This document shows, piece after piece, positions 49,329-49,543 of a stretch of 64,000 nt of DNA. The stretch comes from Saccostrea cucullata (taxonomy: Eukaryota). Below the pieces are notes generated by a model, which worked only from the letters and a program-made list of their open reading frames with translations, was not told the origin of the DNA and searched no databases. Location of the stretch: NCBI RefSeq assembly GCF_032062105.1, contig NW_026920570.1:1-64000 (forward strand), in the 5' to 3' direction. The translations under genes were made by a program, and so were the position numbers. Within the stretch, counting starts at the first letter, position 1. Every line of letters starts with the position of its first letter.

Positions 49329-49351
49329 TATTTATACAGTGGATGACGTCA
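49329..49351 (-). promoter_or_regulatory. pPolB core promoter: TATA box and perfect CRE
   Basis: TATAAATA (minus strand, 49329-49336) ~60 nt above the pPolB ATG; TGACGTCA at 49344-49351. Confidence 0.7.
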
Positions 49352-49397
49352 CAATGCATAGGTAAGCATATTTTTTTTTGCACACGGCACACCTTAC

Positions 49398-49543
49398 AGA
49401 TGATGCAACAGGTATAAAAAAGATGATGCAATAGATATCAAAAAGATGATGCAATAGATTAAAAAAGATGATGCAATAGATATATAAAGATGATGCAATA
49501 GATATATAAAGATGATGCAATAGATCTAAAAGATGATGCAACA
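49398..49543. promoter_or_regulatory. Tandem array of seven C/EBP-ATF4 composite (CARE/AARE) motifs
   Basis: TGATGCAA(T/C) at 49401, 49424, 49447, 49469, 49491, 49513 and 49534; five read AGATGATGCAATA; spacing 21-23 bp. Confidence 0.65.

What the first reader, a model, noticed from the sequence alone, without database searches (positions are those of the whole stretch)
49344..49543. Seven regularly spaced ATF4/C/EBP elements and a CRE upstream of pPolB
What looks like a minisatellite keeps AGATGATGCAA invariant while the spacers vary, with period 21-23 bp (about two helical turns). TGATGCAAT (reverse ATTGCATCA) is the amino-acid-response element bound by ATF4-C/EBP. It lies 65-210 bp above the pPolB TATA, at this end only, and merges with the shared promoter module.
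Basis: partly seen in the sequence, partly recalled or inferred. Interest (0 to 1): 0.88.

Follow-up and report, generated by a model that had tools for sequence, protein, structure and literature searches.

The report
Repeated bZIP-like sites upstream of pPolB
An oyster Maverick (a virus-like DNA element) carries seven evenly spaced copies of a short stress-factor-like binding motif in front of its DNA polymerase gene; the repeat is real and grew out of the element's own promoter, but which protein binds it, if any, is not shown.

Summary
Seven exact copies of AGATGATGCAA lie at 49398-49541, spaced 21-23 bp, at this end only. A full CRE palindrome sits 7 nt upstream of the pPolB TATA box. The element is a roughly 30-kb Maverick/Polinton with TIRs, pPolB, an A32-like ATPase, a double jelly-roll capsid protein and an rve integrase. 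Its protein relatives are annotated in Saccostrea, Ostrea and Crassostrea.

New here: the array is a tandem amplification of the TATA-proximal 22-23 bp of the element's own shared promoter module. That module points outward, away from pPolB. The motif arose from the paralogous module by a 3-nt duplication plus one substitution, and the variable "spacer" is the decaying TATA box.

All seven units match the published 9-bp AARE consensus. That consensus occurs at chance frequency elsewhere in the window. The invariant block in interior units is 16 nt, longer than a bZIP site. Helical phase drifts about 240 degrees across the array.

Best reading (about 0.4): a multimerised bZIP-type enhancer for pPolB. 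ATF4 specifically is about 0.15. Rivals are a neutral minisatellite, a polar cis-signal such as a packaging signal, and a reiterated outward promoter.

The same element encodes a PPP1R15/GADD34-like protein and an IAP. The decisive comparison with related copies was left out and referred.

The parts
49398..49541 (+). Tandem array: seven invariant AGATGATGCAA cores with A/T-rich tails, period 21-23 bp. All seven match TGATGMMAH.
49359..49420 (+). Right-end copy of the shared promoter module, running into the first array unit, which holds an intact element-type TATA (GGTATAAAAA at 49411). It is oriented outward, towards the right TIR.
   Evidence: (I4)
49344..49351 (.). Full CRE palindrome, part of a 14-nt block shared with the cassette at about 33611. 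It lies 7 nt upstream of the pPolB TATA.
49329..49336 (-). TATA box of pPolB, 65 nt upstream of the ATG.
45087..49271 (-). pPolB gene, 1394 aa, uninterrupted ORF. Its 5' part holds an in-frame 147-nt tandem duplication that the relatives lack.
   Evidence: DNA_pol_B_2, 1.4e-57; D10
49547..49742 (.). Right terminal inverted repeat, five 35-39-bp units. The array abuts its inner edge.
   Evidence: I1; D14
19940..20135 (.). Left terminal inverted repeat, five units. No array beside it.
   Evidence: (D16)
21206..21381 (-). Three 55-bp tandem copies of the full promoter module, the paralogue of the array's founder unit. They lie between two divergent genes.
   Evidence: (D9, D11)
33479..33637 (-). 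Intergenic cassette: CRE, 84-nt block, module, TATA.
   Evidence: (D7, D9)
27896..28008 (-). Intergenic cassette: CRE, 84-nt block, module.
   Evidence: D7, D9
20172..20255 (-). Left-end copy of the 84-nt cassette block, with a one-mismatch CRE. It faces the left TIR.
   Evidence: D7
21492..21995 (+). PPP1R15 (GADD34/CReP)/DP71L-like ORF with a PP1-binding core.
44450..44983 (-). IAP-like ORF (BIR plus RING), directly downstream of pPolB with its own TATA.
43761..44597 (-). A32-like packaging ATPase ORF.
28650..30071 (-). Double jelly-roll major capsid protein ORF.

Best explanation
The array is a 144-bp minisatellite made by tandem amplification of the TATA-proximal 22-23 bp of the Maverick's own shared promoter module.

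Its founder unit differs from the paralogous module at the left end by a 3-nt duplication and one substitution. Together these created a composite bZIP half-site pair of the C/EBP-ATF (AARE/CARE) type. The array fills the whole gap between the right TIR and the compact pPolB core promoter (module, CRE, TATA, ATG).

Most likely mechanism (inferred, not shown): each unit binds a host bZIP dimer of the C/EBP-ATF class. Together with a CREB/ATF-type factor on the CRE 7 nt from the TATA, the multimerised sites act as an upstream enhancer of the polymerase gene, in the manner of tandem-repeat enhancers of DNA viruses.

Whether the dimer is stress-induced ATF4-C/EBP or a constitutive C/EBP-type dimer is open. 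I put a functional bZIP-type enhancer at about 0.4 and ATF4 specifically at about 0.15.

Shown: the anatomy, the origin from the module, the orientation and the consensus match. Inferred: binding, activation and stress response.
For: - Seven exact cores, found nowhere else in the window, all fitting the published AARE consensus.
- All variation among interior units falls in 5 tail columns of 23, while 16 nt are invariant. Under a uniform mutation model that has a probability of about 0.001-0.003.
- The TATA-like part of the unit decays while the motif part does not.
- The only other recognisable factor site in the element's promoters is also a bZIP site. The CRE occurs 4 times in the element, against 0.65 expected for the whole window, within a cassette repeated at 33.6, 28.0 and 20.2 kb and here.
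- The element multimerises regulatory modules elsewhere (3 x 55 bp).
- The 275 nt between the TIR and the ATG must hold the pPolB promoter, and these parts account for all of it.
- The element encodes a PPP1R15-like eIF2-alpha phosphatase cofactor, so it engages the same stress pathway.
- C/EBP-class dimers that also pair with ATF4 are known to bind transposon ends in Drosophila (PMC6946401).
Against: - The AARE consensus occurs at chance frequency outside the array (15 observed, about 13 expected), and many 22-bp units would match some known factor motif.
- The invariant block (16 nt) is longer than a bZIP site, and the variable tail is A/T-rich low-complexity DNA that may mutate faster. With a five-fold faster tail the pattern has a probability of about 0.1 (my estimate).
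- Two units are identical, so the array may be too young to show any constraint.
- This copy is rich in tandem duplications, including one inside pPolB that the relatives lack.
- The module and the first unit point away from pPolB.
- Helical phasing is imperfect.
- No AARE-type site lies in any other promoter cassette of the element.
- No comparison with related copies, no expression data and no binding data.
Confidence: 0.4

Rival explanations
1. Neutral minisatellite. Replication slippage amplified a piece of the promoter module, the cores are identical because the array is young or homogenised, and the tails differ because A/T runs mutate fast. The motif match is a coincidence and the array does nothing specific.
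For: - TRF lists 105 rows in 64 kb.
- The element alone holds at least six tandem duplications, including an in-frame 147-nt one in pPolB that the relatives lack.
- Units 4 and 5 are identical, and only 5-7 columns vary.
- The 55-bp array shows the same habit of varying mainly in its A/T stretches.
- The AARE consensus is at background frequency.
- This copy is not fully intact: its integrase is interrupted once, by a nested retroelement.
Against: - It is the highest-copy array of period above 12 in the window.
- The variation avoids 16 consecutive positions.
- The motif belongs to the same factor superfamily as the cassette's CRE.
- It occupies the only upstream space of an essential gene.
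Confidence: 0.3
2. Polar cis-acting signal of the element itself, such as a packaging signal, an auxiliary replication signal or an end-recognition signal. Repeated sites at one end only, just inside the TIR, would be read by an element or host protein to mark that end, possibly in addition to enhancer activity.
For: - The array is at one end only, about 200-340 nt from the right terminus, between the TIR and the first gene.
- It has seven A/T-rich units.
- Human adenovirus 5 has seven A-repeats between the left ITR and the E1 start, at nt 220-400, and they form its packaging domain (PMC4404914).
- The element encodes a capsid protein and a packaging ATPase.
- A C/EBP-class dimer binds P-element inverted repeats (PMC6946401).
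Against: - The likeness is one of architecture only.
- The ATPase here matches the A32 family in Pfam and not the adenovirus packaging protein.
- Pfam found no element-encoded sequence-specific DNA-binding protein among 34 ORFs.
- The unit is visibly a recent derivative of a promoter module, and an old, essential signal would not be expected to be.
- The TIR's own five conserved units are better candidates for end recognition.
Confidence: 0.1
3. Reiterated outward-facing core promoter. Each unit keeps a TATA-like box from the module, so transcription starts in the array and runs out through the right TIR. This would mirror the outward-facing cassette at the left end.
For: - The module and the first unit are on the + strand, pointing at the TIR.
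- The first unit holds an intact element-type TATA. GGTATAWAAA occurs 6 times in the window, all inside the element, against 0.52 expected.
- Units 4 and 5 keep TATA-like tails.
- A cassette copy also faces the left TIR (D7).
Against: - There is no ORF or known RNA to the right.
- The TATA-like part is the part that decays: units 2, 3 and 6 have lost it.
- The motif part, not the TATA part, is invariant.
Confidence: 0.08

Closest known systems
C/EBP-ATF response elements (CARE/AARE) of ATF4 target genes
   Same: The 9-bp core fits the published minimal consensus in all seven units, with the ATF half-site followed by a C/EBP-type half-site.
   Different: Known AAREs are single or a few sites in cellular genes, defined by ATF4 binding and stress induction. 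Here there is one motif amplified seven-fold in a virus-like element, with no binding or induction data and a background-level frequency of the consensus elsewhere.
Tandem-repeat enhancers of DNA viruses and retroviral LTRs (my own knowledge: SV40 72-bp repeats; cytomegalovirus immediate-early 18-, 19- and 21-bp repeats, some carrying CRE/ATF sites)
   Same: Short units are reiterated head to tail, each with one factor site, directly upstream of the TATA of an early gene and combined with a CRE.
   Different: Those are proven by function. This one is inferred from sequence, derives from a core-promoter segment, and faces away from the gene.
Adenovirus packaging domain (A-repeats)
   Same: Seven A/T-rich repeats at one genome end only, between the terminal repeat and the first gene, a few hundred nt from the terminus.
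   Different: No motif comparison was made. The packaging ATPase family differs. The array here looks evolutionarily young.
IRBP18/Xrp1 binding to P-element inverted repeats
   Same: A C/EBP-class bZIP dimer, whose conserved partner also pairs with ATF4, binds the end region of a DNA transposon.
   Different: That site lies inside the inverted repeat of a small cut-and-paste transposon, at both ends. Here the sites are outside the TIR and at one end.

Membership tests
AARE/CARE (ATF4-C/EBP composite element) | 9-bp core fitting TGATGMMAH | tested here: met
   7 of 7 units. Consensus taken from PMC3763548.
AARE/CARE (ATF4-C/EBP composite element) | Occurrence beyond chance as independent sites | tested here: not met
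   15 matches outside the array against 13.05 +/- 3.7 expected for the whole window. The seven in the array are one amplified event.
AARE/CARE (ATF4-C/EBP composite element) | Bound by ATF4 heterodimers and induced by amino-acid or ER stress | not testable with these tools
   No binding or expression data are available here.
AARE/CARE (ATF4-C/EBP composite element) | Core conserved in related copies while flanks vary | not tested
   DNA of related oyster Mavericks was not fetched.
CRE (cAMP response element / ATF site) | Full 8-bp palindrome close to a TATA box | tested here: met
   49344-49351, 7 nt from the TATA. Recurs in the shared cassette.
Viral tandem-repeat enhancer | Short head-to-tail units, each with a factor-type site, upstream of an early-gene TATA | tested here: met
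Viral tandem-repeat enhancer | Raises transcription independently of orientation and distance | not testable with these tools
   No expression data.
Adenovirus-type packaging domain | Repeat series at one end only, between the terminal repeat and the first gene | tested here: met
   Reference architecture from PMC4404914.
Adenovirus-type packaging domain | Repeat motif and cognate packaging proteins of the adenovirus type | not tested
   The motif letters would have come from memory or from a barred fetch. The ATPase matches Pox_A32 in Pfam.
Maverick/Polinton | Protein-primed family B polymerase | tested here: met
   DNA_pol_B_2, 1.4e-57
Maverick/Polinton | Double jelly-roll major capsid protein | tested here: met
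   Model pLDDT 79. Sputnik, mavirus, iridovirus and PBCV-1 capsid proteins match at E 1e-18 to 1e-12.
Maverick/Polinton | Packaging ATPase | tested here: met
   Pox_A32, 26.3 bits against a cutoff of 22.8
Maverick/Polinton | rve-type integrase | tested here: met
   Partial rve match on the minus strand. The gene is interrupted once, by an insertion.
Maverick/Polinton | Adenain-like cysteine protease | tested here: inconclusive
   The 167-aa ORF at 28147..28650 matches the ASFV S273R protease only weakly, E 0.11.
Maverick/Polinton | Terminal inverted repeats | tested here: met
Maverick/Polinton | 5-6-bp target-site duplication | tested here: not met
   No matching hexamers flank the termini on reading. 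The exact termini are uncertain by a few bases.

The most novel reading that the evidence does not exclude
The array serves two purposes, as the adenovirus left end does. It would be both the enhancer of the first replication gene and the polar signal that marks one genome end for packaging into the capsid the element encodes. That would be the first cis-acting packaging signal known for any Maverick/Polinton, and a shared genome-end architecture with adenoviruses.

A second reading, less novel but tied to the finding, is a stress circuit. ATF4-type activation of pPolB would be coupled to the element's own PPP1R15-like protein, which would switch the stress response off again.
Probability: 0.08. 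Interest if true: 0.85.

Novelty: new member of a known kind. Interest (0 to 1): 0.48.

Why it matters
Next to nothing is known about how Mavericks control their genes. None of my three searches on Maverick, Polinton or adintovirus regulation listed a paper on it, judged mostly from titles and abstracts.

This copy shows a readable regulatory grammar:
- a cassette of CRE, conserved module and TATA, reused in front of several genes;
- the module multimerised at the left end, and its TATA-proximal part multimerised at the right end;
- a derived bZIP-type motif amplified only in front of the polymerase.

The same element carries an IAP and a PPP1R15/GADD34-like gene. If the array responds to stress-induced bZIP factors, that would suggest how an endogenous virus-like element of oysters senses host stress. 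Existing oyster genomes and transcriptomes can test this without touching the element itself.

Tried and rejected
- **Second copy in the window.** BLASTN of the element against both flanks gave no hit, so no internal comparator exists.
- **Known RNA.** No Rfam family or tRNA anywhere in the window.
- **Coding.** No meaningful ORF crosses the array or lies to its right.
- **Strict helical phasing.** Rejected: the phase drifts about 240 degrees.
- **"Invariant core equals the bZIP site".** Rejected in that form: the invariant block is 16 nt in interior units.
- **Element-encoded bZIP or other DNA-binding protein.** None was found by Pfam in 34 ORFs.
- **Target-site duplication.** None seen.
- **Literature.** Searches for regulatory descriptions of Mavericks, for GADD34 in Polintons and for oyster ATF4 gave nothing usable.
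- **Relatives of the PPP1R15-like ORF.** The word-based search found one close cluster only. That search sees only proteins 0.55-1.75 times the query length, so the near-blank says little.

Full report
**What is there.** Reading 49100-49800 and a pattern search confirm seven exact AGATGATGCAA copies on the + strand at 49398-49541. They are spaced 23, 23, 22, 22, 22 and 21 bp, and there is no other match in the window even with one mismatch. TRF calls the array period 22, 6.5 copies. A full CRE palindrome lies at 49344-49351. The window contains no N, and nothing in it was taken for human.

**Context.** The array sits in a roughly 30-kb Maverick/Polinton-type element.
- The TIRs are about 19940-20135 and 49547-49742, each built of five 35-39-bp units.
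- pPolB is an uninterrupted 1394-aa ORF at 45087..49271 on the minus strand.
- Annotated oyster relatives start at the same N-terminus, so the ATG at 49271 is the start and the array is truly upstream.
- An A32-like ATPase and a double jelly-roll capsid protein are present. The capsid model has pLDDT 79 and matches the Sputnik, mavirus, iridovirus and PBCV-1 capsid proteins.
- The rve integrase is broken once, by the insertion of a young LTR retroelement.

**The promoter grammar.** The element reuses a cassette: a CRE, an 84-nt block, a module containing TTTTGCACACG, and about 17 nt further an element-type TATA (GGTATAWAAA).
- The module occurs five times in the window: four on the minus strand, facing genes, and once on the plus strand at 49376.
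- The TATA type occurs six times, all within the element, against 0.52 expected. Five are on the minus strand and one on the plus strand, at 49411, inside the first array unit.
- Cassette copies lie at about 33.6, 28.0 and 20.2 kb.
- Three full 55-bp modules stand between two divergent genes at 21206-21381.

**Origin of the array.** The plus-strand segment 49354-49421 aligns with each left-end 55-bp unit read on the minus strand. Scores are 44-62, the best of 500 shuffles reached only 22-28, and the opposite orientation scores 10-12. The alignment runs through the first array unit.
- The unit differs from its paralogue by a 3-nt duplication and one substitution, and these changes create the motif.
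- So the array is an amplified, derived copy of the module's TATA-proximal part.
- The module-plus-array points outward to the TIR, away from pPolB.
- pPolB has its own TATA at 49329-49336, with the CRE 7 nt upstream.
- TIR, array, module, CRE, TATA and ATG account for the whole 275 nt between the TIR and the start codon.

**Is it an ATF4/C/EBP element?** The published minimal AARE consensus (PMC3763548) is met by all seven units. It also occurs 15 times elsewhere in the window, where about 13 matches are expected by chance, so the match is a lead and not a test.
- Interior units are invariant over 16 nt, and all their variation falls in 5 tail columns.
- That is improbable under uniform mutation (about 0.001-0.003). 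It is unremarkable if the A/T tail mutates several times faster.
- The phase drifts about 240 degrees across the array.
- In favour of a bZIP reading: the cassette's one recognisable factor site, the CRE, is also a bZIP site and is enriched. The motif part of the unit stays intact while the TATA part decays.

**A thematic link.** ORF 21492..21995 matches the PP1-binding core of PPP1R15B (4v0x, E 4.6e-5), DP71L (9nb9, E 2.3e-4) and Pfam PP1c_bdg. One 91%-identical relative exists. Proteins of this family reverse eIF2-alpha phosphorylation, the step that induces ATF4 (established knowledge). An IAP-like BIR-RING ORF follows pPolB.

**Verdict.**
- Best explanation: a multimerised bZIP-type enhancer of pPolB, born from the element's own promoter module (about 0.4; ATF4 specifically about 0.15).
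- Rivals: a neutral young minisatellite (0.3), a polar cis-signal such as a packaging signal (0.1; architecture parallel with adenovirus from PMC4404914), and a reiterated outward promoter (0.08).

**Left out.** That comparison is the decisive test.

1. Every motif searched came from the window or from PMC3763548.
2. I wrote it before I saw that the retroelement splits the integrase, so in effect it records the place of a break.

Noticed in passing
window 21492-21995 (+): The element encodes a PPP1R15 (GADD34/CReP)/DP71L-like protein with a PP1-docking motif and the conserved C-terminal core. The best matches are 4v0x_B at E 4.6e-5 and 9nb9_B at E 2.3e-4; Pfam PP1c_bdg scores just under its cutoff. 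An out-of-frame ATG at 21434 opens an overlapping ORF upstream of its start. No paper in the library pairs GADD34 with Polintons.
   Followed up: partly
window 44450-44983 (-): IAP-like ORF (BIR 2.9e-19, RING 7.7e-13) directly after pPolB, with its own TATA. Its end overlaps the start of the ATPase ORF in another frame.
   Followed up: partly
window 48949-49213 (-), inside pPolB: In-frame 147-nt tandem duplication (86% identity between copies) in the basic, coiled N-terminal part of pPolB. It is absent from the annotated relatives aligned.
   Followed up: partly
central third of the element, within the integrase gene: A young LTR retroelement is nested in the Maverick. Its LTR segments are 100% identical over 235 nt, and rve/H2C2 and RT-RNaseH matches lie on the + strand. 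It interrupts the Maverick's rve integrase once. The pieces were not joined.
   Followed up: partly
window 20330-21141 (-): An outward-facing gene lies next to the left TIR. It is a 149-aa ORF with 21-nt (heptad-like) periodicity, and by eye it is followed in another frame by CCHC zinc-knuckle-like stretches. The frames were not joined, and its status (intron or break) was not assessed.
   Followed up: no
window 30243-30716 (-) and 22316-22519: Further tandem duplications in the element: 204 nt twice (93% identity, spacing 270) inside the 256-aa ORF, and 102 bp twice in a non-coding stretch.
   Followed up: no
window 22600-27300: A stretch of the element with no ORF above 186 aa and no Pfam match. 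It could hold spliced or decayed genes. An element-type TATA lies at 24992 (-).
   Followed up: no
window 52550-56386 (+): An uninterrupted 1278-aa Gypsy-type pol ORF (RVT_1, RNase H, H2C2, rve) lies in the right flank, and a (GTCC)n run at 49795-49851 sits just outside the right TIR.
   Followed up: partly
window 2346-4088 (-), 10922-12446 (-), 15506-16243: The left flank holds B-box (TRIM-like) ORFs, one with a weak beta-propeller match, and a 168-bp satellite of 4.4 copies.
   Followed up: no
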